Shown here: positions 1 to 58,996 of the stretch, piece after piece
Numbering within the stretch: the first letter of the stretch is position 1
Layout: the number at the start of each line of letters is the position of its first letter
Program-made: the position numbers and the translations under genes
Sequence record: MW749003.1
Strand: one strand, 5' to 3'
DNA length: 64,000 nt
The notes under the pieces: model-generated
The model's input: the letters and a program-made list of their open reading frames with translations, nothing else
The model's database searches: none
Told to the model about the DNA's origin: nothing

Positions 1-2
1 AA

Positions 3-3000
3 ATGTATGATTATTCTACTAGAAACCTAAGTTTTATTAAGATCTGGAAGTTTCTAAAAGATCAAGGTATAAAAAATAATAAATTCTTTTTAAAATTAAA
101 TGATGAAACATTACAGGGTGTTGATCCATATGATCCAAATTTAACTGATGAACAAAAGGTAAGAATACAGGTTGAAGTAATGACTAACTTTTGGTATTTC
201 TTAAGGGAAGTAGTAAGAATTCCTGAATCGGGCGGTTCTATTCATTTCATGTTACACAGAGCCAATCTTGGTCAAATGTTTCTTATGGAAAATAATATTG
301 ATATGATTGAAATATTACCTCGTCAGAATGGAAAAACTATCGGTGCAGTATGTCGTTATATATGGGTATATCATTGGGCTACCAAAAATACTCATATGAT
401 TTTTAGTAATAAACAATACGCCGATTCTCAATTAAATATTAAACGTTTTAATGATATAACTGAATTATTACCTAGTTATTTAAAGACTCATTTAGACCCT
501 AAAAAAGATACAAATAACTTAGCACAAATTTCATGTGCAAAAAACAATAATAAAATTGATGCAATGAGTACTGCTAGGACTGTTACTGACGCTGACAAAC
601 TGGGTTAACTAACTATGGCTCAGTATAAACTCCTTTAATTTCTGGAACGTCCTTCCAAGGATAATCAGAAGCTAAGACTTTTAAAAGTAAAGTTCAACGA
701 CTATCGAAACCGACTTATTAGATCGTTGTGATAACGCTAGATAAGGATAAGGGAGTAGAGTAGAATACAAGCTATAGGTATTCAAAAAGGGGAGCACCGT
801 ATTTAGGTGAAGATATAGTCTCATCTCTATGGTAACATAGAGCAGTTCATAAGAGAACGGTATAGGCGTAGCGAACCTATATGAAGGTAACTTGCGTGGT
901 TGTACAGTACCAATTATATGGTTAAATTTTTAGCCCATTATAATAGTGATATTATAATGAATCCTTCTTAACTGCTGGAACATCCTTTTAGGACAATCAG
1001 CATCCAAGCATTGTTATATAAATAACAATGAAGGTTCAACGACTATCGAAACCGACTTATCAGATCGTTGTGATAATGCTAGATAAGGATAAGGGAGTAG
1101 AGTACAACTCAAGCGATTGGAGTTGGAAATGGAAGGCATCTCAATGAGATGAAGATATAGTCTCATCTTCATGGTAACATGGAGCAGTTCATAAGAGAAC
1201 GGTATAGGCGTAGCGAATCTATATGAAGATAAATGATGATGAATTTGCATTTTTAAAATATAATGATACGGTATACGCTAAACTGGTGCAAACTGGCGTA
1301 TTAAAACTCTCTTAACTGCTGGAAACTCCTAAAGTCTTTAGTACCAAAGTGTAATAATCTAAAGGATATATGGACAATCAGCATCCAAGCATTGTTATAA
1401 ATAACAATGAAGGTTCAACGACTATCGAAAAATATAATTTGTATTATATTGAGTAGAGTACTTTCAAGCGAAAGGAAAAGGAGAGCATGATGAAGGTATT
1501 AAATACTGGAGTGAAGATATAGTCTCATCTCTATGGAAACATAGAGCAGTTCATAAGAGAACGCATTAGACGTAGCGAATCTAATGGAAGGTAATTATGA
1601 GTGCTGCACCAGCACTATCAAAAGCATCAGAAGCCGCACAGCGTAATGGTACTCCTTACGGAAAATTAATTACAACAACTCCTAAACTATTGGGCAATAC
1701 ATTAGTAATAATGTAATTGAATCTTCCTTAACTGCTGGAAACTCCTATATGGACAATCAGCATCCAAGCATTGTTGTTTATAACAATGAAGGTTCAACGA
1801 CTATCGAAACCACTCTAACAGATCGTTGTGATAACGCTAGTTAGAAGGAAGGGAGTAGAGTACAGCCTAAGTGATTGAGGTTGGAAAAGGGAAGCATCTC
1901 AATGAGATGAAGATATAGTCTCATCTTCATGGCAACATGAAGCAGTTCATAAGAGAACGCATTAGATGTAGCGAATCTAATGGAAGATAAATGAATGATC
2001 TTGATACAGAAATGGGTAAATATTGTAAGGGTATGATTGATGATGCATGTCCATTTGATGAAGCTTGGTATGATTGGGATATTGATGAAATTAAAAAATA
2101 TATTGAACAGAACTCTCGAAATGACTTTGTTTATTTAGTATTTAATTATAAAGAGTTAGGACATGATGACAAATGGTATCAAAAACAATGTCGTCAGCTC
2201 AATAATGATTTATTAAAAATTAAACGTGAAATATTATTGGAATGGACATTGGCTAACGATACTTCACCTTTTTCAGAGGAACAATTAGCAGAAATTGGAC
2301 AACATGCAGGTGAACCTATTGGTAAGTTTTATGTAATGAAAAGATATAAATTTGAAATTTTCAGTGAAATGCGAAATATATTTAAAAAATCATGGCTAAT
2401 CGGTATAGATATTGGGGCAGGTTTGAATCGAGATTTTACAGTGATATCTATTATTGATCCTAAAGATATGGTTCAAAAAGCAGTATTTAGAAGTAATAAT
2501 ATATCTTTGCCCGATTTAAAAGATTTGGTTATACACCTAGTATTAGAATTTTGTCCTAATGGTGTCATTATTCCAGAACGAAATAACTTAGGTATCTCTT
2601 TAATACAAGATCTACTACGTTCAGAAGTAGCTAATAACTTATATTATGAAGTTAGAGAAGTAAAGGGAGAAAAGAAAGTTGATGACCCAAAAAGATCATC
2701 TAAAAAGACAGTTAAGACTAAAACAAGAGTTTATGGGGTTACTACTAGTAAAGATAGTCGGGATATAATGATCAATGAGATTCTTAGTAATGCAGTTAAT
2801 GATACTCCACATGTGTTTACAAGTAAATATATTTTTGAAGAATTAAGAACATTAGAAAGAAATAAGAAAGGAAAGATTGAACATAGGGATGGAGGTCATG
2901 ATGATACATTATTCTCATGGCTAGTGGCATGCTATGCTTTCTTATATGGAAATAATATAAATAAATTTGTTAAAGTCATCAGTGATGGCGATAATAATGA

Positions 3001-3205
3001 GAATGAAGAAAATAATAAAGATAGAGCTAGAAATATTTATGCATTGTCTAAAATTAATACTGGTAAAAAATCACAGAGTGAGATATTATTAGAAATGTAT
3101 AAGAATGAAAGTAGATTTTTTGAAGATCATAATGAGAATGATAATAATATTAGAAAGCAAAAAAGAATGAAAAGCCTAAATTTTATTACTAGTTTAAATA
3201 GATAA
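3..3205 (+). CDS. terL: Terminase large subunit, spliced: join(3..605,895..922,1236..1279,1600..1683,1994..3205), 656 aa from the ATG at 3 (true start may lie upstream of the window)
   Basis: Walker A PRQNGKT in exon 1. Removing four introns gives one open frame (1971 nt) reading DKLG|RGCTVPIIW|YDEFAFLKYNDTVYA|SAAPALSK...ITTTP|NDLDTEMG, which restores Walker B (IIWYDE) and the TTP coupling motif. The C-terminal RNase H-like nuclease has IGIDIGAG and HDD motifs. Confidence 0.95.
606..894 (+). mobile_element. Group I intron terL-I1 (289 nt, ORF-less)
   Basis: Exon ends in U; P1 CUGGGU/GCUCAG with U.G. P4 UUCUG/CAGAA, R element UUCAACGACUA, S element AAGAUAUAGUCU, terminal G at 894. Confidence 0.93.
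923..1235 (+). mobile_element. Group I intron terL-I2 (313 nt, ORF-less)
   Basis: P4 UGCUG/CAGCA, R and S elements, terminal G at 1235. Splicing restores the W-Y-D-E Walker B codons (t+at = Tyr). Confidence 0.93.
1280..1599 (+). mobile_element. Group I intron terL-I3 (320 nt, ORF-less)
   Basis: P1 UACGCU/GGCGUA, P4, R and S elements, terminal G at 1599, frame restored. Confidence 0.93.
1684..1993 (+). mobile_element. Group I intron terL-I4 (310 nt, ORF-less)
   Basis: P4, R and S elements. The terminal G at 1993 is the G of the ATG that the ORF track used as a start. Junction reads ITTTP|NDLD. Confidence 0.93.
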
Positions 3206-3208
3206 ATG

Positions 3209-3242
3209 AAAGAATGTAGATGAAAATCTACATTCTTTTTTA
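3209..3242 (+). terminator. Intrinsic terminator after terL
   Basis: AAGAATGTAGAT/ATCTACATTCTT hairpin followed by a T-run. Confidence 0.8.
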
Positions 3243-3259
3243 TATTGAAGAGAATTACT

Positions 3260-3271
3260 AACAAATTCATA
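3260..3271 (+). promoter_or_regulatory. Late (non-virion RNAP) promoter AACA-N6-TA
   Basis: AACA aattca TA, matching the AR9 late consensus, upstream of the 3291 gene. Confidence 0.65.
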
Positions 3272-3290
3272 TGAATTTAATTAAAATTAG

Positions 3291-4085
3291 TTGACACATA
3301 TAGGAGGAAGTCTAATGGCTGAAATGATGGATGAACAAGAAGCAAAATTTTTAACAGATGAAGATATTGATCATGTAATTACATCTTTATCAGATGATAT
3401 TATTTTTGATAGTTTGAAAGAACAGATTAGCAATGTATTTGTACAATCTGATAGTAATCCAGTATACTATATTACTTATTTTACTGGTAAATATAATTAT
3501 ATTATGAATAAATATTCAGAGTATGAAGAAGTATGTGAAAAAATAAAAGAAATTAGAGAAGAATTTTATGAAAAACTTAAAACACTAATTGAAGAAAAAT
3601 TTGATTTTACATTAAATTTACCTGCATTCTTTGATGATGAAGAGAAGTTTAATATTATTGGGAACCTTTATGATTTCTTCATAATTAGAAATAAAGTAAA
3701 TTCAGTTAATGTTATCTCTGGATATATTGACAAAGAAATTAAGGATCTTATTAAATACTATAAACCTTTAATTGATAAAAAAGATCTTACCTATAATAAC
3801 ATCAAGAAGACTATTAATAAAGATATTGCAGTAATTATTTGTAAACTACCTGACATTATTTCAAATCTGACTGTGGAATCTGGTTTTGATCTAGTACAGC
3901 TAATGATAGATGATGAACAAGAAATTACGAATATGGTTATTGGTTCTTTATTTGATGAGAATACTGAATATATTAATATTGGAGAAAGCTTTATTGATAA
4001 TATTCTTAATGCTATTAAGAAAAATGAAGTATATTATTTGCAGGCTAGAACTCAATTAGTAAATAAATATTCAGATAAAAAATAA
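3291..4085 (+). CDS. Hypothetical protein, late class (likely start ATG 3315)
   Basis: Long ORF; GGAGG RBS before ATG 3315; late promoter. Confidence 0.8.
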   Translation: MTHIGGSLMAEMMDEQEAKFLTDEDIDHVITSLSDDIIFDSLKEQISNVFVQSDSNPVYYITYFTGKYNYIMNKYSEYEEVCEKIKEIREEFYEKLKTLIEEKFDFTLNLPAFFDDEEKFNIIGNLYDFFIIRNKVNSVNVISGYIDKEIKDLIKYYKPLIDKKDLTYNNIKKTINKDIAVIICKLPDIISNLTVESGFDLVQLMIDDEQEITNMVIGSLFDENTEYINIGESFIDNILNAIKKNEVYYLQARTQLVNKYSDKK

Positions 4086-22782: not shown

Positions 22783-25700
22783 TTATTCCCTAGTTAGAGA
22801 ATAGATTGCTTGTATTGCTTCATTCCCAATTTGGCGGGAGTTTCGACCCATTTGATCTAACATATTTTTCTTTTCCCATATTAGTCGTTCTGCTTCTTCA
22901 TTAGCTTCTTTACTAAATACTCCACGTAGAGATACTGTATCACCCAAAATCTTCCAGTAGATTCGCTACATCTACTGCGTTCTCTTATGAACTGCTCTAT
23001 ATTACTATAGAGATGAGACTATATCTTCACAATATAATTGTGCCCTCCGTTTCCATTTAAAGAGGAATTATAACCTTATTACGGAATACCTCTACCGCTT
23101 GGCTGTACTCTACTCCCTTCCATCTAACTAGCGTTATCACAGCGATCTGTTAGAGTGGTTTCGATAGTCGTTGAACCTTCATCTTTAAATGAATTAAAGA
23201 CGCTTGGATGCTGATTGTCCATATAGGATTTTCCAGCAGTTAAAAGGGTTTTACTACGACAGTAGATTATTATCTTTTATAGGTAAATACTAAATTACCA
23301 CAATCCCATATTCTTTTAAATCTAGTTTTATCCATGATTTCAAATTCAGTACTATTATCACTATATAATTTTGGAAATTTCTTTTTGAGATTAGACTTTC
23401 TATAATTAAATCTATGGAATCGTTGAGTTTTTTCAACATTAACATACCAATAGTTGGGTTTACTAATATGACTTAATTCAAATTTATTATTGATATAAAC
23501 ATTACCATCTGACCAGCGTCTATCTGCATAGGTTATTAATTCTTTCCACTCATAATTTCTCTCGAAGTATTTGAGAAGTTTACTAAAAGCACCTATTACT
23601 CTATAGTCCATATCGGTAGCGAATCTTGATAGTTCAAAAATATTATCAACACTATTTCTACCTAGACTTTTTCTAAGTTTACTAAAAGTCATAACCGCTA
23701 CAAGTTCATCGCCATCTTCTTTTGGAAGCCATAAGCCTAATTTAATTGATGACAAATCTTTTCCCTGAATGTGATTTCTTTCTAGGAATTCATTTTTAAA
23801 ATTGTTATCAATTACTTCTACATAACAATTTCTAGCGTATATTTTAGTAGAATTATTTAATTTTAGTAAGTGTCTTATTTTTTCTTTTACTATGAGAGGT
23901 TTGTTAACCCATTCGTCTTCAAAAATTTGAATTAGTCTAATCCCTTTACTATTACATTTTTCTAATTTTTCTAAATGATAGTTTCTTTTCTTCCCCATTT
24001 GCTCTGAATGCCAATATAAACCATTAAATTCAAAAGCAATTTTTTTGGAAGGAATAAATATATCAATCTCTTTACCTTCAAGTAATTTCCTGTCATTACA
24101 TATGACTTTATCTACAACTAATCCTTTAATAAAAGAAGATAGTTCTTTTTCCATTTTTGATGAACTTTTAAATGCACAATATGGACATCTATTTCCATTA
24201 TTAAAGTTTTTAATTGTAACTTCATACTCCTTATTACAACTATGATGTAACAACCTAATCTTCGTTTTATTATTACGATATTCACCTAATAATGAATACT
24301 CATTATTTGTAACTAAGCTAATTTTTCTTTTAACCTCATCAGTAGTTAGCCTTCTTTTACCAGAACATTGAGGACATCTATTTTTCAAAGCATAATAAGG
24401 AGTAGTCTTCCATTCATAATTACAGTCATTACATCTGAAAAGTATTTTGGTATCGATATTGATATATTTCTCAAGACTTATAAGTCTTCCATTAGTCTTT
24501 TCTTTTAATTCCTTCTTAAACTCATCATTGCTTTTTAATCTTGATTTACCTTTATTAATATCAGCACACTGAGGACATCTACTACCATTATGAAATATAT
24601 CAGGTCTAACCTCATATATATTTCCACATAGTTCATGCCTTAATTTGATTTTAGTCTTATTGTTAATATATTCATTGGATAAAACTGTATAGGTATTGTT
24701 AGTTAGTAATTTAACTTCTTCTTTGAATTCATCCAGTGTCTTTTTGCGTGGCATACACTAATACCTCCAAATAATTAATAATTATTTGTTTATTTGACAC
24801 TGTATTCCCTTAAAAAGAAATAATATTGAATTTATCGTAGTCCCCGCCTAAAGCCTTTAAATAACCATTATAAGGAATTACTGTATCAACAAAAAGTTCA
24901 TCCTCTGCGGGATAGTCAGGGTATATAACAGGATAATCAGGTAAGTATCTATCTTCCAGCTTTTGAGGTCGTGTTTCTTTTGTTGAGAGAATTCTAATTT
25001 TACTTGGATAAATATTCTATAGTGATAGGTAAAGATTTGATATAATCTCCTCTTTTTCCCCCACTTCACACCCTACGTGCGACTTTCACCGCATAAGGCG
25101 TTCCATCAAAATATATTATTTTGACTATGACCCTTCGCTCCAATGGAGTTACCCATCTTCATAACTACTATGGTCTGCTGACTTTCTATATAAGAGTATC
25201 AACTATAATTTCTCTTATATAGAATCTCTGACGTTCCGTAAATGATAGTATAGCTATAACTTAGATGCCTTCTGCCCTATATAAACTTCTATTGTACCAC
25301 ACTTTACAATCAGGTCGTTCACCAGTACCGTATTACTAAACCCTGAATTTATATAGTATAAAAAGGTTCGTGTTCCTCATCATATTATAGCACCGCCCAC
25401 CCTATCTATTAGTATTATAGCATTACTAATATTCAGATGACTTCACCTAACTTCATACAAATATTTTATATAGTTTAAAATAGATGCATGTAGGAGTATT
25501 AGCGACAAGTCTTCAATGAAAATGGTCATATCTTTTACTTGTTCTCATTTACAGTTTAGATTATAAAATCTACTCCATTTCACATTAAATGCTTATAGGA
25601 GAACGTCACATACGATACTGCTCTATTGGATATCTTGTTACATATACATGTTTATCTTTGGTAATATCAACTGCCGCAATGAATAGAATATCAGTTAATG

Positions 25701-26778
25701 TAAAGTTACGTCCTAGTTCTTCTCTATATAATGGAATAGGAATTTCATTCCCCTTATCATCTTTAATCATTAAACTATTAAAACGACTTTCAATAGACTT
25801 AATGTATAATGAGATCATCTTTTTAACTGCTTCCTCAGAAAATTGTTCTCTTATATTACTAATAGTTATCTCTTTTCCATTATGCTTAAATTTACTAAGT
25901 TCTGATTCACGTTCAAGAATATAATCTTGGATATATTTAAGAAAGAATGGATAAAATTCTACCACTAATTGTGATAGGGGAATACCTGTCCATCCAAATC
26001 TAATAGGGTTATCCTTCCAGCTATTTGACTTAAATCGTGGTGCTGAGATTACACTACGAGTTGCATAATCAACAGATTTACCTAAAGAGTTTTGATGGAA
26101 CATACCATTTTTACCAGCTAAAGAGGATGTAAAATAGTCATAGATATCATATAAAAGAGTCTGAATAGATGATTCTGTTATTACTCCCATAAAATCATAA
26201 TCTTCACCCTTAGAAATTGATTGGCTATACCTAATTAATTTAGCATATTTGTCATTCACTTCATCAACAGCTTTAATCGTATCATTAGAAGATTTTGAGG
26301 GATTATAATCTCTATAAAATGCTGGAATCACTAAATATTTGTCAATAAATATATCATCCTTACCAAGTTTATTTAATAATGTAAGATAACTTGTTCGTCT
26401 ATCAGTTCCAGTATTACTAAATTTTAATTGGTCGTAAATAGTATAAAAATAGGTAACTCCAGTTTTACCATTATCTTTATCTTCAACTAACTTGCCGCCC
26501 TCAACTTTAAAATATTTCTTTCCAGATAGACAATCTGCAATTTTTCGATCCATAGAGGTTAGAAGCTTATAAATTACTGGATGGAGAAATTTTCTCTTTA
26601 AGTCTATATAACCGAAAATTATTTTTCTTTCTTTACTTCCCGGATAACCAAAAATACTAGTTGAAAATAATCCATCTTCAGTTGGTATATTTCCCATATT
26701 AAAGTAAATCGGATTTGTTACTTCTTTACATGCATGAGAAGTAATAAATTTATCTATATTTAATGTATCTATTTTCAT
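22783..26778 (-). CDS. Multisubunit RNAP beta' N-terminal (catalytic) subunit, probably virion RNAP, spliced: complement(join(22783..22944,24834..25018,25614..26778)), 503 aa
   Basis: GLFSTSIFG, GKSVDYATRSVI and TRYP motifs. The spliced frame (1512 nt) reads TRYPIEQY|QNIYPSKI...NGYLKALGGDYD|GDTVSLRG, restoring the DxDGD catalytic motif. The late promoter at 26801-26812 fits a packaged enzyme. Confidence 0.92.
22945..24833 (-). mobile_element. Group I intron (1889 nt) with a homing endonuclease gene in the P1 loop, inserted in the DYD|GD active-site motif
   Basis: Exon end CUACGAU pairs with GUCGUAG (23254-23260). P4, R and S elements and the conserved 3' module lie at 22945-23250; terminal G at 22945. 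Confidence 0.93.
23270..24754 (-). CDS. Intron-encoded homing endonuclease: Zn-finger repeats + Vsr/EDxHD-like nuclease + C-terminal Mom-like GNAT domain
   Basis: Three H/C-xx-C...RCPxC repeats; EIDIFIP...FEFNGLYWH; ELSRFAT...ITYADRRWSDGNVY. Own late promoter at 24779-24790 and GGAGG RBS. Confidence 0.8.
   Translation of the reverse strand: MPRKKTLDEFKEEVKLLTNNTYTVLSNEYINNKTKIKLRHELCGNIYEVRPDIFHNGSRCPQCADINKGKSRLKSNDEFKKELKEKTNGRLISLEKYINIDTKILFRCNDCNYEWKTTPYYALKNRCPQCSGKRRLTTDEVKRKISLVTNNEYSLLGEYRNNKTKIRLLHHSCNKEYEVTIKNFNNGNRCPYCAFKSSSKMEKELSSFIKGLVVDKVICNDRKLLEGKEIDIFIPSKKIAFEFNGLYWHSEQMGKKRNYHLEKLEKCNSKGIRLIQIFEDEWVNKPLIVKEKIRHLLKLNNSTKIYARNCYVEVIDNNFKNEFLERNHIQGKDLSSIKLGLWLPKEDGDELVAVMTFSKLRKSLGRNSVDNIFELSRFATDMDYRVIGAFSKLLKYFERNYEWKELITYADRRWSDGNVYINNKFELSHISKPNYWYVNVEKTQRFHRFNYRKSNLKKKFPKLYSDNSTEFEIMDKTRFKRIWDCGNLVFTYKR
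25019..25613 (-). mobile_element. ORF-less group II intron (595 nt, IIB/bacterial class B-like)
   Basis: 5' end GUAUG; D1 closure UGACGUUC/GAACGUCA; ~25-nt D4 hairpin; D5 ACGCCUUAUGCGGUGAAAGUCGCACGUAGGGUGUG (CGC triad, GAAA loop); D6 ending CCUAUCACUAU. Excision restores the frame (c+ag = Gln). Confidence 0.9.
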
Positions 26779-51838: not shown

Positions 51839-54800
51839 TTATTCTGAATATATTTTACCAATTTCTCGTTTAAGATGTACTAATGCTTTGTTTAAATATA
51901 GAGCATTATAAATATCAACGGTCATGCGTGAAACAATACTCAATGGACTCATAATAGCTTCAATATTCTCATCTGGATCATTCTCACTAAAAGGCTCTTG
52001 ATCTTTAGGAATAACATCAGATACAATTGTTTTAAGTGCTGTATAATACGTAATCTTATCTCCAATACCAAGTTCATCATCATACTCAATATAAATCTCA
52101 ATGAGTAGTCCGTCTACTTCAGTACCTTTAATTTTCTCACCTGATTGCTTTTGAATAGGTTTAAGATTAACAGAAGTCAGATCATTAGTAACAGACTTAA
52201 TCTTATCTTCTTTCTTCTTACTATCTTTAATATAGTTCTTCAGAATCTTTTGTACTGAAGGAGAAAACTCACTGATATCTTTATTGTAGTACATTACAAC
52301 ATCTACAATCTTACCAGTATATTTAGAACTTACTTTGTTCTTAGATAACTCATTAATAGTCTCATTAAAGTCATCTCCTAGTTTATCTAAGAGTTGGTTG
52401 AGTGATTTATCTTCAAAGGAGTTTTCAAAGATAATCAATGGATCACCAGTCTTAACCATATCGCCTTTCTTAACAATAAAGTCAATGTTTGAGTTAACTC
52501 CAAGAGCAAGTTCTTTCTTCATAGTAATTTTAGTAGATAGGTCTTGAGATAAGCTTTCTGTAATAATACTACTATCTTCATAAGTGTAATCTGCGCTTGC
52601 TAGTGCTACTTTACAAAGCTTCCCTGTAGTATACGTGATATCATCTTTCTTATCGCCAAGGAAGTAACTTGGATTCTTCGCTAGGATATCATCTTTTTTG
52701 AATTTCTCTCCTACTTTGATAATGAGTTCTTTACGATTAGCAATGTAAACAATTATCTTCCACCAAATTCGCTAGTTTTGGTGCGCCCTCTAACGGACTG
52801 CTCCATGTTACCATGAAGTTGAGACTATATCTTCAAAGTTCCCTGTTTCCCAGTATACATAAATAAAAGTATACCAGATTTCATCTCAGAAACCTGCCAC
52901 CAATCGCTTGTGGGGTACTCTACTCATCTTTATTAATAAGATTTTCGATAGTCGTTGAACGTTCTCTATTAGTTTAATAGAGCTTCGCTTCTGATTATCC
53001 TTTTAATAAGGACTTCCCAGAAATTAAAGGAATTTAACGTGAGCCTTTAAACCCACCATTACTATTCTTACTCATATGCTCGGAGAGATCAATGACGTCT
53101 TTCTTACCATCATTATAACGAACGACAGCTAGCTCATGTTCTTCATCTATGGACTCTAGAACTCCATCTTTTTTTGCTCTAAACACAAAGTCGTCACTTA
53201 GAATATAAGCAACAGTCTTCTCTACACCACTACCAAATAGAGGTTTAGATTGCTTTGTGGTAGGAATGATCGTTAACTTCCATTAGATTCGCTACGTCTA
53301 ATGCGTTCTCTTATGAACTGCTCTATATTTCTATAGAGACGAGACTATATCACTATCCTTAATAATTAAGGATAACTCCCATTTCCATTTAAGGGATTCT
53401 CACCCACTCCAAACACTTGAGCCGTACTCCTATTGCGGAATTTCACCGCTACTCACAATCCTAAGATTGCTTTCGGATAGTCGTTGAACTTTATTCAAAA
53501 GTTTTCTTTAAGTATTCTTCTAGATTACTTAACTGTGTATAATTGAATCTGAATAGTTTATAACCCTTTCTTTTACAATACTCATTTTTTAGATTATCAC
53601 GGAATTGTATATCCTCTAAGCCTTCTTCTCCACCAAAAAAATCAGATGGCTTAAAATGTTGCTTACCATCATATTCAACTAATATTTTAGTTCCGTCCTC
53701 ATCTTCAAAATAGAAATCAAATCGTAATCTTCTTCCTGTTTTTGGATTAACTAAGTCTGAAAATGATTTTTCAATTTCAAAGTAGATATTATTCTGGTTG
53801 AAATAATTAGTAATAATTTGAATCCCACTAGAATTTCTTCCAATTCCATTACTACAATGAGGACATCTGTACCCTAAAATAAAGTTATTTGGCTTTATCT
53901 TAAAAGTTTTTTCACATTTTCCATGATATAATGTAACATGTTTGTGAGCATGGGTATATTCATTTGTTAGAGAATATTCATTACCAACCAATTCATAAAG
54001 TTTTTCTTTAAATGTCTCTGTAGTTCTTTTTTTAGTTTTAGCACAATTTGGACAACGATAACCAGAAAGAAAATTTACAGGTAATACAGAATATTCATTA
54101 CCGCATTTGTTATGTCTCATCTTAACGTGAGTCATATTGTTTATATATTCAGAAGTAGGTTTATATTCATTACCGACCAATTCTTCAACTTTTTTTCTAA
54201 AATCAGAATCGGTTCTTTTTTTATTTTTAGCACAATTTGGACAACGATCTCCTCGTCTGATAAACTGATATGGTTGAACCTTATATTCATTACCACATTT
54301 ATTATGTCTAAATAAAATTTTAGTATGCTGTGCTAAAAATCTTCCTAATACCACATATTCATCACCAGTTAATTCTTTTACTTTCTTTACAACTTCCATA
54401 TGTTTTTTATTCAATAAACAAATTGGACATTTAGTTACTTTATTTTTCTTAAAGAAACTATCTGGTCTCATTTCAAATGTACTATCGCATACTTTATGAT
54501 AAAATATAGCATTTATAGTTGATGATATATATTCTCTAACTTCAAATTCATTATTATATACATCTTTTAATCTTCTAGAATAAACTTTACTTAACATATT
54601 ACACCCTCCGACAAACAGTTGTAATAATATGTTAAATTATTTAAAAACTATTTTGAATATTAGCTGCTGATTCTCCAATTCTATTAGTTTTCAAACCTTC
54701 ACGCTTATTATTTCTAATTACGTTGTGGTCTAATAGACTCTAAGGAATTTCCAGCAATTAGAGAGTTTATCTAATAGTATTACTACTATTAGGCACGAAT

Positions 54801-57800
54801 CATGCTTTTGTTGGGTACTCTGCATGCCTACTCGTGGAGGATCAGCATGCCTTACTGTAAAGGAGTTCAATAATTCTGCTGGACCATAGATATTTGTCGT
54901 GTTATTTTTTGTATTAGGATTGGTGTCTAAGAATCCTCGTGTGTTTTTAAATGCTGGATCAAAAGTTAACTGTCTAACCCATTATCTTCATATAGGTTCG
55001 CTACACCTATACCGTTCTCTTATGAACTGCTCCATGTTACCATGAAGATGAGACTATATCTTTATCTAGTCAAAAAAAAAGAAAGGAGATGACTAGATAT
55101 CTCCCATTTCCATTTAAGGGATTCTCACCCACTCCAATCGCTTGAGCCGTACTCCTATTGTGTGTTAACCACTAAAGGATAGTCGTTGAACGTTACTCTC
55201 GTTATAATTAAAAATAATTTATAAAATTATTATTTTATTTTTTCCATAATAGTAGCTCTCCTTTTTAACTTACTACTATTATAATATATTTAACGAGAGT
55301 CTTCGATACGGATTGTCCTATTATTAGGAGTTTCCCGTAGTTAGAGAGATTTTATCATTATATATCACTATATAAGGGGGCAGTTTAATTCACCCCAACT
55401 TTCATTATCTTCCACTAGATTCGCTACATCTAATGCGTTCTCTTATGAACTGCTCTATGTTTCCATAGAGATGAGACTATATCATCATCCTATTAGGATG
55501 CCTCCCATTTCCAACTCCAATCGCTTGAGTTGTACTCTACTCCCTTCCACTAACTAGCGTTATCACAACGATTTGTTAGAGTGGTTTCGATAGTCGTTGA
55601 ACCTTACTCTAATGAGTCTTGGATGCTGATTGTCCTTAAAGGATTTTCCAGCAGTTAAAGAGGTTTACTTATAATATTTCTATTATAAGGGACTATTATA
55701 AATCTTGTCTGGAAATTCAAGAATTATAATAATTCAATCCGAGTCGGGCGTTGACATTGCCATGATTCCACGCATACTAGGGTCATAAGCTCGAATATCA
55801 GTTGTATAAGCATCCGTTTTCCTTCATATAGGTTCGCTACACCTATACCGTTCCTTAGAACTGCTCTAAGTTTCCTTAGAGACGAGACTATATCATCACT
55901 TAAAAAGTGCCTCCCATTTCCAGCCTCAATTGCTTAGGCTGTACTCTACTCCCTTCCTACTAACTAGCGTTATCACAACGATCTGTTAAAGTGGTTTCGA
56001 TAGTCGTTGAACCTTTACCTTATTACAAATAATTTGTAACTTAGGTACTTGGTTGCTTATGATTACCCAATCCTTTAAATTTTTACCATACCTGAATTGT
56101 TATATTCAGCCATCTATTATGTTTCCATATAGATTTGGTATTAAAGGCTCTAAGGGTTTTCCAGCAGTTAAAGAGGTTTTAATTGGACTAAAACACTTTA
56201 ATCCAAGTTCCTTCCTGAAAGCCCCTTGTAAGTAGCCGCACCACCCTTTTCAATTTCCAAAGAAGGGTTAAGGACACTATATTCATCGACAGTAGGTGAA
56301 TTCATTAATGTCTTTAATAGAATATCCTGTGGAACAGACATCTTAATAGGATTACCAGCTTTCAGTGTATCCTTATACGTTTTAAATGAATCTGCCAAGA
56401 TTTTATATAGATAAGCATTTACTTGCTCAGTACCACGGATTCGATATGAATTCATATCATTCAGTGGACTATAGCTCATATCTTCCAATAAGGTATTCGC
56501 ATACAACAATATGTCATAGATATTCTCAGGTAATTCTAACTGTTTCAGCACATCTAATGTGATAGGATCAACCATTAGAGATAGAGTATTGTGAAGACCT
56601 TTACCCATATTTCTACTACCGAACATCTCATAGAAAGTCTCAATATAAGGATCTTTAGAGTTCATTTCTTCAAATGCATACTCTTCAGTAGCCATAGTAC
56701 TTAGACCACTTAATAATAGGGAATTTCTCAATAAAGAATTATTATAATATAGGTATCCATCTTTAAAACGGATCTTATCATAGTCATCATCAATTGTAAT
56801 TCTCTTATTTTTAGTATCAAAGCTATATTCAATATTATATCTTTCTAATAAATCTTCTAATCCTAATTCATATCCAAGAAGAACCACTAGAGGGATCATT
56901 CTATTATTAATACGAACTCGGTTATATGCTAGAGACTTAGAATTACTTAAAGAAGATAATTTTTTATAAGCTTCCTCACTAAGTGAAGTGACAACAACTT
57001 TAATAATGAGTTCTGAAAGACTCATATCAGTATTTTCTTGTTTCTTATTATTAATCAGATAAACTCTTTTACTTGAACGATTAAGAGCAATAACGTTTTC
57101 ATTATCTTTTGTATGACCGATTGGTAAGAATTGTTTATCATCAATATTAATCTTAGCAAGCTTAGCCATATTATCAAGATCACTTTTCAATAAATCTTCT
57201 ACTTCTTTTTGACTGAACATAAGTTTATATTCATCATTCTCTAAGCTTAGAAGGAAAGAAGAAATCTCATTATATTCAAGAGTTGTTTCATAACCCTCAT
57301 TAATTGTTAGAGCGTTACCTAGGCGATAATTAAACTTCTTACCTGATACCTTAAATTCATTTAAATCCATACCAAAGAGTTTCTTAAGTTTCTCAGTTTT
57401 ATGAGATAATTTAGAACCAAAGCGCATGACAAAAAACTTATTGTAGTTAGTAGTAATCTGAACTTCATCAGGTTTTGTTTTTACAATGGGCAAAGATAGA
57501 ATTTGCTTAAGAATTAATTTTTTACCACCATTAATATTCATAAACCTACCATCTCTGATAATAGGATAATCAAATTTAACAGTATGCTTTACATTACGAT
57601 CATCTTGGAAAGTAACAGTATAAGTTAATTTTTTTGATAAATCAGTAGATGTGTCTTCTGTTTTAATATCACTTACAAATAATTTAACATCGCTATCTCC
57701 ATTAAATGATGAAAGAACTGCAACTAAGTCTTTTTTCATCTGTTTTTCAAAGTAGCTCATATCAAAATCTTTGAGATTTGAATATCTAGTTTCTTCTTGA

Positions 57801-58996
57801 ATAACATTTGTATTGGTAATTGGCTTTCGGTCAATACTTGTTGATTTAAAGTCATCAATAATATCTTGAATATTAATATCATCAAGAGTAACTTGTTTTT
57901 GTTTTTCTTTTAGACGTTCAAGAGTCTTTCTCTGTTTAATTTCATCTCCACCAGTAGACTGAAGCTCTTTAAGAGTTGAAATATCGGCTTTTAATTCTTT
58001 ACTGTTATTTAAAATATCAATGATTTCATCTTCACTTTTATCAAGAATATCTTCATCACTTGAATCAATAGCTTTTTCAATATCATCACCAATCTTATCA
58101 GTAACTTCAATTGCACTACTAGATAGTTTTGTATTTCCATCGATTTGGAAATTACTTAATAATTTTTCTTTAACTCTTTCAGATTTTTCTTTTACTAATG
58201 CATCTCTCTTGTTTTCTGTTTCTTGAGTTGCCTCTTCTTTACCTAAAGGTTTTTCATCATTATTAGTCCTCTGATGGTTTGCTGTTTTAATGAGAACATT
58301 TAATGCATTAAGGAATCTATTTGCAAGAAGATTAGAAAGTTCATCATTAATATTGAATTTAATAAATGTATTATTAACTGTAGTATAAAAAATAAAGTCT
58401 ACATTCTTAAGCTCTTTCTTCTGTTCCTCTGTTAACAACTTTCTTTTAATTGCCATATAGATATAAGCAAAAGGTGTTCTTGCATTATTTAAGTCAAAGA
58501 ATGATGGATCAAGAACATTGTCAGGAACAGGAATTGCTACTGCTTTATTCTCATATGATGCGCCCTCTTTAATTTTAGATATAAGAAAATCAAAGTACAT
58601 TTCAACTCGTTTTCTTCCACGAACTTTAATTTCTACTTCATTCTCAAGATGCTCGTTTGTAATATCATAGATCAAGTTAAGATCATTATAATTAGTTAAG
58701 GCACGTTTAGTATAAATAATACTAGAACATTTTGCTTTTACCTCATCATAATATTTCTTTTGATCTACAATAATTCTTTTATTCTTCTGAATGGTATTGA
58801 ATGCTCTTGGAATATATACTCCTCTAAAAAAAGAAGGACTGAATATATTAGAATTAATAAAATCAAATATCTCACTTTGATTATTTCCTGAAAAGAAAAT
58901 CAAATTTGAATTACGGTCATTTTTCCTTTTTTTAATGGATGAAAGTTTTATATTAGAGTACACTCTCAATTCCTTGAGATTATCAAGATAAAACAA
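51839..58996 (-). CDS. Multisubunit RNAP beta subunit, probably virion RNAP, spliced: complement(join(51839..52749,53051..53270,54802..54979,55392..55402,55737..55814,56201..58996)), 1397 aa
   Basis: The spliced frame (4194 nt) reads GLSGRNLD|DAYTTDIRAYDPSMRG...STPDSD|KVGV|VRQLTFD...GMQSTQQKH|IIPT...SNGG|FYIANR...GDKITYYTALKTIVS...PLSIVSRM, giving beta conserved regions in order. Late promoter at 59022-59033. Confidence 0.92.
52750..53050 (-). mobile_element. Group I intron beta-I5 (301 nt, ORF-less)
   Basis: P1 GGGU/GCUC; P4 variant UUCUG/CAGAA as in terL-I1; R and S elements; terminal G at 52750. Confidence 0.9.
53271..54801 (-). mobile_element. Group I intron beta-I4 (1531 nt) with a homing endonuclease gene in the P6 region
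   Basis: P1 GCAU/GUGC. The ORF lies between the Q element (CAGCAG) and the R element (UUCAACGACUA). Terminal G at 53271. Confidence 0.92.
53491..54597 (-). CDS. Intron-encoded homing endonuclease: four Zn-finger repeats + Vsr/EDxHD-like nuclease, no GNAT domain
   Basis: HxxC...RCPxC repeats; LRFDFY...VEYDGKQH; own late promoter at 54622-54633. Confidence 0.82.
   Translation of the reverse strand: MLSKVYSRRLKDVYNNEFEVREYISSTINAIFYHKVCDSTFEMRPDSFFKKNKVTKCPICLLNKKHMEVVKKVKELTGDEYVVLGRFLAQHTKILFRHNKCGNEYKVQPYQFIRRGDRCPNCAKNKKRTDSDFRKKVEELVGNEYKPTSEYINNMTHVKMRHNKCGNEYSVLPVNFLSGYRCPNCAKTKKRTTETFKEKLYELVGNEYSLTNEYTHAHKHVTLYHGKCEKTFKIKPNNFILGYRCPHCSNGIGRNSSGIQIITNYFNQNNIYFEIEKSFSDLVNPKTGRRLRFDFYFEDEDGTKILVEYDGKQHFKPSDFFGGEEGLEDIQFRDNLKNEYCKRKGYKLFRFNYTQLSNLEEYLKKTFE
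54980..55391 (-). mobile_element. Group I intron beta-I3 (412 nt) with a vestigial endonuclease expression cassette
   Basis: P1 GGGGU/GCCCC; P4 variant UACGG/CCGUA; R and S elements; terminal G at 54980. Confidence 0.9.
55403..55736 (-). mobile_element. Group I intron beta-I2 (334 nt, ORF-less)
   Basis: P1 GGAU/GUCC; P4, R and S elements; terminal G at 55403. Confidence 0.9.
55815..56200 (-). mobile_element. Group I intron beta-I1 (386 nt, ORF-less)
   Basis: P1 UUGGAU/GUCCAA; P4, R and S elements; terminal G at 55815. Confidence 0.92.

What the first reader, a model, noticed from the sequence alone, without database searches (positions are those of the whole stretch)
3..3205. Terminase gene cut by four tandem ORF-less group I introns leaving 28-, 44- and 84-nt exons
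Seen in sequence: four 289-320 nt introns within 1.4 kb, each with U.G at the 5' site, P4/R/S elements and a terminal G. Removing them gives one frame and restores Walker B (IIW|YDE) and the TTP coupling motif. Automated annotation would call two fragments. Inference: DNA packaging needs four sequential self-splicing events, which could act as a timer or stress-sensitive gate on late development.
Basis: partly seen in the sequence, partly recalled or inferred. Interest (0 to 1): 0.72.

Follow-up and report, generated by a model that had tools for sequence, protein, structure and literature searches.

The report
Four group I introns in terminase
The large terminase gene of this Bacillus jumbo phage really is cut by four small self-splicing-type introns, but the same arrangement is already annotated in its near-identical relative AR9, and sister phages lacking the introns show they are optional genetic parasites, not a built-in timer.

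Summary
The window is Bacillus phage vB_BspM_Internexus (PBS1/AR9 group, Takahashivirus). Rfam places four full-length group I introns at the stated positions (70-94 bits; gathering score 50).

Removing 606-894, 923-1235, 1280-1599 and 1684-1993 gives a 1971-nt ORF. That is exactly the length of the uninterrupted terminase gene of sister phage Goe21, with 653/656 identical residues and no gaps. Each intron has a U.G pair at its 5' splice site and a terminal G. A profile of orthologs aligns the rejoined LPRQNGKT, IIW|YDE and TTTP| motifs to the Walker A, Walker B and TTT motifs of T4 gp17.

It is not new. The AR9 GenBank record (98.2% identical DNA) annotates this gene as a five-piece join, and AR9 intron content, including the terminase, is cited in the literature. 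In the same genome the virion RNA polymerase beta gene carries five introns.

The "timer/gate" inference is not supported. Natural alleles exist with 0 introns (Goe21), 1 intron (with an endonuclease-like ORF) and 4 introns, all encoding essentially the same protein.

Small new points:
- The AR9 record's fourth junction seems misplaced by 9 nt, dropping TTP.
- Fourteen synonymous exon changes, confined to the splice-site region, track intron presence.

The parts
3..605 (+). Terminase large subunit exon 1 (201 codons). It carries Walker A (LPRQNGKT) and ends ...DKLG with U605 at the 5' splice site.
   Evidence: PHROG terminase large subunit hits: phrog_32359 at 3e-123 and phrog_2 at 1e-31. Colinear with Goe21. 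Walker A aligns to gp17 SRQLGKT.
606..894 (+). Group I intron 1 (289 nt, ORF-less). P1 contains U605.G618 with 7 bp on the exon side, P10 has 8 bp, and the terminal G is G894.
   Evidence: Rfam RF00028, 82.6 bits. The boundaries cannot slide relative to Goe21.
895..922 (+). Exon 2 (28 nt). It encodes RGCTVPIIW plus the first base of the Tyr codon, which is the first half of Walker B.
923..1235 (+). Group I intron 2 (313 nt, ORF-less). It sits in phase 1 inside the Walker B region. P1 contains U922.G933 with 3 bp on the exon side and 3 bp on the intron side. No P10 was detected. The terminal G is G1235.
   Evidence: Rfam, 93.5 bits.. Its 39-aa ORF (1028-1147, AR9_g122) overlies the conserved ribozyme core.
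1236..1279 (+). Exon 3 (44 nt). It encodes (Y)DEFAFLKYNDTVYA, which holds the Walker B Asp and the catalytic Glu.
1280..1599 (+). Group I intron 3 (320 nt, ORF-less here). P1 contains U1279.G1295 with 7 bp on the exon side. The terminal G is G1599. It is the most divergent of the four (about 60-64% identity to the others), with an extended P5 region and a shortened P7.1/7.2 region.
   Evidence: Rfam, 69.6 bits.. A version carrying an endonuclease-like ORF occurs in the SRR547798 contig L012.
1600..1683 (+). Exon 4 (84 nt, 28 codons). It ends ...GKLITTTP, the ATPase coupling motif TTT.
   Evidence: TTTP aligns to gp17 IITTTP.
1684..1993 (+). Group I intron 4 (310 nt, ORF-less). It is 83% identical to intron 2. 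P1 contains U1683.G1692 with 3 bp on the exon side and 2 bp on the intron side. P10 has 4 bp. The terminal G is G1993.
   Evidence: Rfam, 81.2 bits..
1994..3205 (+). Exon 5 (403 codons plus stop). It covers the rest of the ATPase domain and the C-terminal nuclease domain.
   Evidence: PHROG terminase hits. The profile matches the nuclease domains of gp17 and RB49 (3ezk, 3c6a).
3208..3239 (+). Intrinsic terminator-like hairpin followed by a T run, directly after the stop codon.
   Evidence: 14-bp stem. Six terminator-like sites were found in the region against 0.7 expected.

Best explanation
The single large-terminase gene (T4 gp17 type) of this PBS1/AR9-like Bacillus jumbo phage is interrupted by four ORF-less group I introns. 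All four belong to one phage intron family with a P7.1/P7.2 insertion, resembling subgroup IA. That family is present at about 18 places in the genome.

The introns sit in or next to the most conserved ATPase motifs:
- intron 1 at LG|RG;
- intron 2 inside Walker B, IIW|YDE;
- intron 3 between VYA and SAAP;
- intron 4 directly after TTTP.

Mechanism. After late transcription each intron folds on its own. Its internal guide sequence pairs with the end of the upstream exon, forming P1 with a U.G wobble. An external guanosine attacks that site. The freed exon 3'-OH then attacks after the intron's terminal G. All four excisions together produce a 656-aa terminase mRNA.

The introns are best explained as selfish mobile elements, or decayed remains of them, that persist because they splice cleanly out of an essential gene. 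They are not a device the phage needs.

Shown here: intron identity, exact junctions, the restored protein, and intron presence/absence polymorphism.
Inferred: actual self-splicing in this phage, and the mode of spread (endonuclease-mediated homing with co-conversion of flanking exon sequence, followed by loss of the endonuclease ORF).
For: - Rfam hits are full-length and above the gathering score for all four introns. The same four are found in AR9 and PBS1, and none in Goe21, BpSp or StaM_SA1.
- Spliced ORF: 1971 nt, equal to the Goe21 uninterrupted ORF, with 97.1% nt identity and 653/656 aa identity and no gaps.
- The protein aligns without gaps across all four junctions to uninterrupted orthologs down to about 30% identity.
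- P1 with a U.G pair and a terminal G are present in each intron. P10 is present for three of the four.
- Two 3'-terminal hairpins are 100% paired in 10 paralogous copies, with compensatory changes in 10 of 14 pairs. The first lies within the Rfam model; the second lies beyond its end.
- The ortholog profile hits T4 gp17 (3ezk, E = 1e-14), aligning Walker A, Walker B-Glu and TTTP.
- There is only one terL place per genome record.
- The AR9 record annotates the ortholog as a 5-piece join. AR9 introns, including the one in the large terminase, are cited as known, partly from experimentally determined mature mRNAs (bioRxiv 10.1101/2020.12.14.422802).
- Alleles with 0 introns (Goe21) and 1 intron (SRR547798 contigs L011/L012) exist. 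In the one-intron allele, intron 3 carries an ORF related to the intron-borne endonuclease-like ORF at window 53494-54597.
- Fourteen synonymous sites, all within spliced nt 598-759, separate 4-intron alleles from alleles lacking introns 1, 2 and 4. No such sites occur elsewhere in the gene. Several lie in the P1/P10 strands, including the U at -1 of introns 1 and 4.
- The intron core resembles introns of many phages, including T4-type nrdB.
Against: - No RNA data for Internexus were available, so splicing is inferred and not observed.
- Introns 2 and 4 have short P1 helices (3 bp on the exon side), and intron 2 shows no P10. Efficient splicing may therefore need cellular or phage factors. Some Bastillevirinae phage introns splice in vivo but not in vitro (PMC11878797).
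- The AR9 deposited protein differs at junction 4, being 653 aa without TTP. If that came from cDNA sequencing and not from prediction, an alternative 5' splice site would be in use.
- The nature of run SRR547798 (DNA or RNA) is unknown. DNA is inferred because intron 3 is retained, upstream divergent-strand sequence is present, and the exon flanks are Goe21-like and lack U at -1.
Confidence: 0.9

Rival explanations
1. Regulatory gate. The four introns are kept because the need for four guanosine-dependent splicing events delays or conditions terminase production on the cell's energy or GTP state, timing DNA packaging.
For: - All four must be removed to make the only terminase.
- Group I splicing uses a guanosine cofactor (established knowledge).
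- A similar 'molecular on-switch' idea was proposed for Bastillevirinae and T4 introns (PMC11878797).
- The four-intron state is conserved in AR9, PBS1 (two independent sequences) and Internexus.
Against: - Goe21 has the same protein (99.5% identical) with no introns. Another allele has one intron. BpSp and the staphylococcal relatives SA1, S6 and UFV_DC4 are also uninterrupted.
- Late timing of the AR9 ortholog is accounted for by its promoter class (PMC5312081).
- The same intron family sits in unrelated genes such as the RNA polymerase subunits, as expected of a spreading element and not of a gene-specific regulator.
Confidence: 0.08
2. Splicing is not autonomous, or is heterogeneous. The introns need a protein cofactor. 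Alternatively, because they are near-identical and separated by very short exons, they give a mixture of correct and exon-skipped products, so that only a fraction of transcripts encodes active terminase.
For: - Introns 2 and 4 are 83% identical.
- The 5' splice sites of introns 1 and 2 share the same GGU|UAA context, and P1 of intron 2 uses only those bases.
- Exon skipping is documented for Twort orf142 (23-nt exon between two similar IA2 introns) and for the SIOphi phage (PMC10136302; PMC11878797).
- Some phage introns spliced only in vivo.
Against: - The guide sequences of introns 1 and 3 are long and distinct (7 bp on the exon side). Differentiated splice-site recognition is reported to suppress skipping (PMC10136302).
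- Skipping exon 2 alone would shift the frame, so it would be waste and not function.
- No RNA data were available here.
Confidence: 0.2
3. The gene is a decayed pseudogene, or its pieces are translated separately and assemble, as the split RNA polymerase subunits of these phages do.
For: Database records for Internexus and PBS1 list separate 'terminase' fragments.
Against: - Exons 2 and 3 are 28 and 44 nt, have no start codons, and are split within a codon.
- Exon sequences carry only synonymous changes across alleles in this region, which indicates purifying selection on the joined frame.
- No second terL exists, and these phages are viable isolates.
Confidence: 0.02

Closest known systems
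Bacillus phage AR9 gene g121 (terminase large subunit, AMS01205.1; Lavysh et al. 2016, Virology 495:185)
   Same: Orthologous locus with 98.2% identical DNA. It has the same four group I introns at the same places and is annotated as a five-exon join.
   Different: The AR9 deposited protein is 653 aa. It equals the product with the junctions used here minus TTP at junction 4, that is, exon 4 ended 9 nt early, after an A. The junction used here ends in U and matches all uninterrupted orthologs. The paper itself could not be read here.
Staphylococcus phage Twort orf142 (three group I introns in one gene; Landthaler & Shub 1999, as summarised in PMC10136302)
   Same: Several small, closely related phage group I introns lie in tandem in one late gene and are separated by very short exons (23 nt in Twort; 28, 44 and 84 nt here).
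   Different: This case has four introns, not three, and the host gene is a terminase ATPase, not a tail tube protein. Exon skipping is shown for Twort and only conceivable here.
Group I introns in terminase large-subunit genes of Bastillevirinae (PMC11878797) and of Staphylococcus jumbo phages MarsHill/Madawaska (bioRxiv 10.1101/2020.12.14.422802)
   Same: The terminase large subunit is a recurrent intron target. In Bastillevirinae up to two or three introns per gene are reported, and splicing was shown for SIOphi TerL. The Madawaska locus holds an annotated homing endonuclease between the terL fragments.
   Different: These are different phage lineages, and many of those introns carry endonuclease ORFs. 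Rfam's gathering-score search found no RF00028 hit in the MarsHill and Madawaska loci, so those interruptions were not verified here.
T4 td / nrdB / nrdD(sunY) group I introns
   Same: The P7-P9 core of the intron matches T4-type phage records at about 78-90% identity, including a match under RB3 nrdB. It is the classical phage intron type, inserted at conserved sites of DNA-metabolism genes.
   Different: T4 has one intron per gene, mostly with endonuclease ORFs. Here four ORF-less copies are clustered in 1.4 kb.

Membership tests
Group I intron (Rfam RF00028) | Conserved catalytic core (P3-P9 with the P/Q/R/S elements) recognised by the covariance model above the curated threshold | tested here: met
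   Four hits of 69.6-93.5 bits against a gathering score of 50, each covering model positions 1-253.
Group I intron (Rfam RF00028) | 5' splice site after a U that forms a U.G wobble within P1 with the internal guide sequence | tested here: met
   U605.G618, U922.G933, U1279.G1295 and U1683.G1692. The exon side of P1 has 7, 3, 7 and 3 bp.
Group I intron (Rfam RF00028) | Terminal guanosine at the 3' splice site | tested here: met
   G894, G1235, G1599 and G1993. Introns 1 and 2 cannot slide against the intron-less allele. Introns 3 and 4 could slide 1-2 nt, but only the stated positions keep U at -1 and G at the end.
Group I intron (Rfam RF00028) | Exon ligation restores a continuous gene colinear with intron-less homologs | tested here: met
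   1971 nt, equal to the Goe21 ORF, with 653/656 aa identical and no gaps against five uninterrupted orthologs.
Group I intron (Rfam RF00028) | Self-splicing with a guanosine cofactor (in vitro) or spliced junctions in RNA (in vivo) | not testable with these tools
   No RNA data are held. The literature cites experimentally determined mature mRNAs for some AR9 genes, but the primary paper could not be read.
Subgroup IA (phage-type) group I introns | Extra P7.1/P7.2 helices between the 5' strand of P7 and the 3' strand of P3 | tested here: inconclusive
   All four cmscan alignments shown (introns 1, 2 and 4, plus the copy at 55453-55711) have an insertion of about 80-85 nt at exactly that position. 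The core resembles T4-type introns. The helices were not modelled individually, and intron 3 has a shortened version.
Mobile (homing) group I intron | Intron-encoded homing endonuclease ORF | tested here: not met
   The longest ORF inside any of the four introns is 39 aa and overlies the ribozyme core. A variant of intron 3 in SRR547798 does carry an ORF, truncated in the contig, that is 35-40% identical to repeats of the intron-borne ORF at window 53494-54597.
Terminase large subunit, T4 gp17 type | N-terminal ASCE ATPase with Walker A, Walker B plus catalytic Glu, and the TTT coupling motif | tested here: met
   The ortholog profile hits gp17 (3ezk, E = 1e-14). LPRQ.GKT aligns to LSRQLGKT, iiw.DE to MIYIDE and itttP to IITTTP. 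The functional names of the gp17 motifs come from established literature, not from a tool.
Terminase large subunit, T4 gp17 type | C-terminal RNase H-like nuclease domain | tested here: met
   Profile positions 399-482 and 533-595 match the gp17 nuclease domain, and 3c6a (deposited as 'Terminase large subunit') is hit at 6e-11. PHROG terminase families also match.

The most novel reading that the evidence does not exclude
The array of four near-identical introns separated by 28-84-nt exons is not neutral. It may act as a guanosine- or energy-sensitive throttle, or it may generate exon-skipped transcripts. Intron 2's guide sequence also fits the 5' splice site of intron 1. Either way it would measurably limit or modulate terminase supply, and the block of 14 synonymous exon changes would be an adaptation that keeps splicing accurate.
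Probability: 0.1. Interest if true: 0.5.

Novelty: already known. Interest (0 to 1): 0.2.

Why it matters
As a discovery it matters little. Multi-intron genes in the AR9/PBS1 phage group are published, and the orthologous AR9 gene is already annotated with five exons.

The practical value is for annotation.
- The Internexus and PBS1 GenBank records split the terminase into fragments and call spurious ORFs inside the introns.
- The AR9 record appears to lose the conserved TTP of the ATPase coupling motif through a junction placed 9 nt off.
- This affects anyone using TerL for phylogeny or structure work on these phages.

The natural series of alleles with 0, 1 and 4 introns also offers a clean system. 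It comes with an endonuclease-bearing version of intron 3 and a tract of linked synonymous exon changes. It could be used to study how ORF-less introns spread and whether they cost the phage anything.

Tried and rejected
- Pfam gave no hit for exons 1 and 5 searched separately. PHROGs and a profile search against PDB sequences were needed to place the protein. A single-sequence search against PDB found nothing.
- The primary AR9 genome paper (Lavysh 2016) and the J Virol version of Korn et al. are not held. Experimental proof of splicing of this particular gene could therefore not be checked. Only secondary statements were available.
- Scans of IMG/VR and of the GTDB genomes for further alleles returned only AR9 itself and nothing, respectively.
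- A text search for SRR547798 found no paper, so the nature of that run is unknown.
- I considered that contigs L011 and L012 might be partly spliced RNA. I rejected this because their exon flanks carry the Goe21-type bases (A, not U, at -1 of sites 1 and 4), intron 3 is retained with an ORF, and the upstream divergent-strand region is included.
- I considered the pseudogene and split-protein readings and rejected them (see rival explanations).
- The promoter scan showed no enrichment over shuffles (19 found against 20.9 expected). The AR9-type promoters are not sigma-70-like in any case.
Full report
**Identity of the window.** Megablast of window 1-3400 gives a 100% match to positions 1-3400 of Bacillus phage vB_BspM_Internexus (MW749003.1, 252 kb). 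Matches of 98.2-98.5% go to PBS1 and AR9, the classical uracil-DNA jumbo transducing phages of B. subtilis (genus Takahashivirus).

**The observation.** An Rfam scan of the whole window at gathering thresholds finds four full-length group I intron matches on the + strand: 596-842, 914-1184, 1266-1546 and 1673-1942. Scores are 70-94 bits against a gathering score of 50.
- Each upstream exon ends in a U that pairs with a G in a P1 helix: U605.G618, U922.G933, U1279.G1295 and U1683.G1692. P1 is long for introns 1 and 3 (7 bp on the exon side) and short for introns 2 and 4 (3 bp).
- A P10 pairing with the downstream exon is present for introns 1, 3 and 4 but not for intron 2. Each intron ends in G.
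- The Rfam model stops about 50 nt before the 3' splice site. I tested two 3'-terminal hairpins on ten paralogous copies from the window. The first has a GNAA loop and lies inside the Rfam model. The second lies in the part the model does not cover.
- In those hairpins 100% of cells are paired, and 10 of 14 pairs show compensatory changes. None of 500 shuffles, and none of the slid registers, reached this. The RNA structure therefore continues towards the predicted 3' ends.
- No intron contains an ORF above 39 aa.

**The junctions.** Joining 3-605, 895-922, 1236-1279, 1600-1683 and 1994-3205 gives 1971 nt with a single terminal stop.
- Sister phage vB_BsuM-Goe21 has an uninterrupted ORF of exactly 1971 nt at the same locus.
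- The two are 97.1% identical in DNA and 653/656 identical in protein, with no gaps.
- Introns 1 and 2 cannot be slid at all against Goe21.
- The spliced protein also aligns without gaps through all four junctions to uninterrupted orthologs. These come from Bacillus phage BpSp (61% to the Goe21 ortholog in the multiple alignment; 65% by tblastn), Staphylococcus phage SA1 (41%), Erwinia phage Ea35-70 and a phiKZ-like Pseudomonas phage (about 28-30%).

**What the gene is.** PHROGs classify both large exons as terminase large subunit. A profile of five uninterrupted orthologs hits T4 gp17 structures (3ezk, E = 1e-14; 3cpe), a further 'Terminase large subunit' chain (3c6a) and, weakly, a gp17 fragment (2o0h, E = 0.08). 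It aligns as follows:
- LPRQ.GKT to gp17 LSRQLGKT;
- GRG....iiw.DE.af to VRGNSFAMIYIDECAF;
- itttP to IITTTP.

By established knowledge of gp17 these are Walker A, Walker B with the catalytic glutamate, and the TTT coupling motif. The introns thus sit at LG|RG, inside Walker B (IIW|YDE, phase 1), between VYA and SAAP, and directly after TTTP. tblastn finds only one terL place per genome record. A strong terminator-like hairpin follows the stop codon (3208-3239).

**Already known.** The AR9 GenBank record annotates the ortholog (AR9_g121, terminase large subunit) as a join of five pieces. Rfam finds the same four introns in AR9 and PBS1.
- A preprint on related Staphylococcus jumbo phages states that a similar set of genes, including the large terminase, is known to be intron-disrupted in AR9. 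It refers to experimentally determined mature mRNA sequences and cites Lavysh et al. 2016. I could not read that paper.
- The terminase is not even the most interrupted gene in this genome. [quoted passage not shown] In the window it lies on the minus strand at 51839-58996 and shows four Rfam introns plus a fifth, ORF-bearing one.
- The intron family occurs at 18 places in the Internexus record. Its P7-P9 core resembles introns of hundreds of phages, including T4-type nrdB.

**A discrepancy in the AR9 record.** The AR9 deposited protein (653 aa, retrieved from the protein cluster of the Goe21 protein) equals the AR9 product made with the junctions used here, minus residues TTP.

**Polymorphism.** The same protein cluster held two ORFs from a Logan assembly of run SRR547798.
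- Contig L012 carries the upstream region, then exons 1, 2 and 3 fused, then intron 3.
- Contig L011 carries the end of intron 3, then exons 4 and 5 fused.
- In L012 intron 3 continues, after the CCAAGC element that opens P6, into an ORF truncated by the contig end. That ORF is 35-40% identical to the repeats of the ORF at window 53494-54597. The window ORF lies between intron core elements in the interrupted polymerase beta gene. It resembles the CapR-like/Vsr-like endonuclease class described for these phages (PMC12350094).
- Natural alleles therefore exist with no intron (Goe21), one intron with an endonuclease-like ORF, and four ORF-less introns.
- Comparing five alleles, 14 sites split the four-intron alleles from those lacking introns 1, 2 and 4. 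All 14 are synonymous and all lie in spliced nt 598-759, the stretch spanning the insertion sites. None lies elsewhere in the 1971 nt.
- Several of them lie in the P1 and P10 strands. They include the base at -1 of sites 1 and 4, which is U in intron-bearing alleles and A in intron-less ones.
- This fits co-conversion of flanking exon sequence during intron acquisition, selection for guide-sequence pairing, or both. I cannot separate these.

The best-supported account is ordinary group I splicing of four independent ribozymes out of a late transcript, restoring the only terminase. The introns themselves are selfish elements lodged at conserved sites.
- The "timer/gate" idea is not excluded, but nothing supports it. 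The introns are dispensable in close relatives.
- The AR9 ortholog's late expression follows from its non-early promoter (PMC5312081).
- The same intron family occupies unrelated genes.
- The idea has also been proposed before for phage introns (PMC11878797).
- One point deserves an experiment. Introns 2 and 4 are 83% identical. The 5' splice sites of introns 1 and 2 share GGU|UAA. Similar tandem introns flanking very short exons do skip exons in Twort orf142 and in SIOphi.

**Verdict.** The structural interpretation is correct and the functional speculation is unsupported. The finding is already known for the sibling phage, so interest is low. Residual value lies in correcting three database records and in the 0/1/4-intron allele series.

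Noticed in passing
window 51839-58996, minus strand: [quoted passage not shown] Rfam finds four, at 52801-53085, 55030-55401, 55453-55711 and 55864-56243. A fifth has its 3' core at about 53268-53351 and carries a 368-aa ORF (53491-54597) with repeated Zn-ribbon-like units. AR9 annotates the ortholog g189 as a six-piece join. The Internexus record lists fragments.
   Followed up: partly
window 22783-26778, minus strand: [quoted passage not shown] The group II element spans only about 540 nt here. AR9 annotates an extra homing endonuclease gene (g147) in the corresponding region. Group II introns in AR9 and PBS1 are described in PMC12350094.
   Followed up: no
L001 (AR9) 3173/3182, equivalent to window 1674/1683: The AR9 deposited terminase protein (653 aa) lacks TTP at the exon 4/5 junction. 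It is reproduced by ending exon 4 nine nt early, after an A. Uninterrupted orthologs keep TTTP, so the AR9 record's junction is probably misplaced.
   Followed up: yes
L012 1-1586 and L011 1-1482 (Logan assembly of SRR547798): A PBS1-like terminase allele with only intron 3, which there carries an endonuclease-like ORF entered after the CCAAGC element that opens P6. Exons 1-3 and 4-5 are fused. The sequence upstream of spliced nt 598 is AR9-like, and the splice-site region is Goe21-like, so the allele is a recombinant mosaic.
   Followed up: partly
window 598-605, 895-922, 1236-1279, 1600-1683 (spliced nt 598-759): Fourteen synonymous sites are perfectly linked to the presence of introns 1, 2 and 4 and confined to the splice-site region. 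They include U (intron-bearing) versus A (intron-less) at position -1 of sites 1 and 4.
   Followed up: yes
window 603-608 and 920-925: The 5' splice sites of introns 1 and 2 have the same GGU|UAA context, and intron 2's short P1 uses just those bases. Intron 2's guide sequence could therefore also pair at site 1, which would skip exon 2 and shift the frame.
   Followed up: no
window 1028-1147, 1597-1716, 1749-1844: Small ORFs annotated as genes in database records (AR9_g122, INTERNEXUS_2 / PBS1_8, INTERNEXUS_3) lie inside introns or run from an intron end through exon 4 into intron 4. They are most likely annotation artefacts.
   Followed up: partly
L007 (Madawaska) 565-4010 and L008 (MarsHill) 565-3041: The terminase genes of these Staphylococcus jumbo phages are also split, with an annotated homing endonuclease between the pieces in Madawaska. 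Rfam's gathering-score scan found no group I match there, so the nature of those interruptions is unverified.
   Followed up: no
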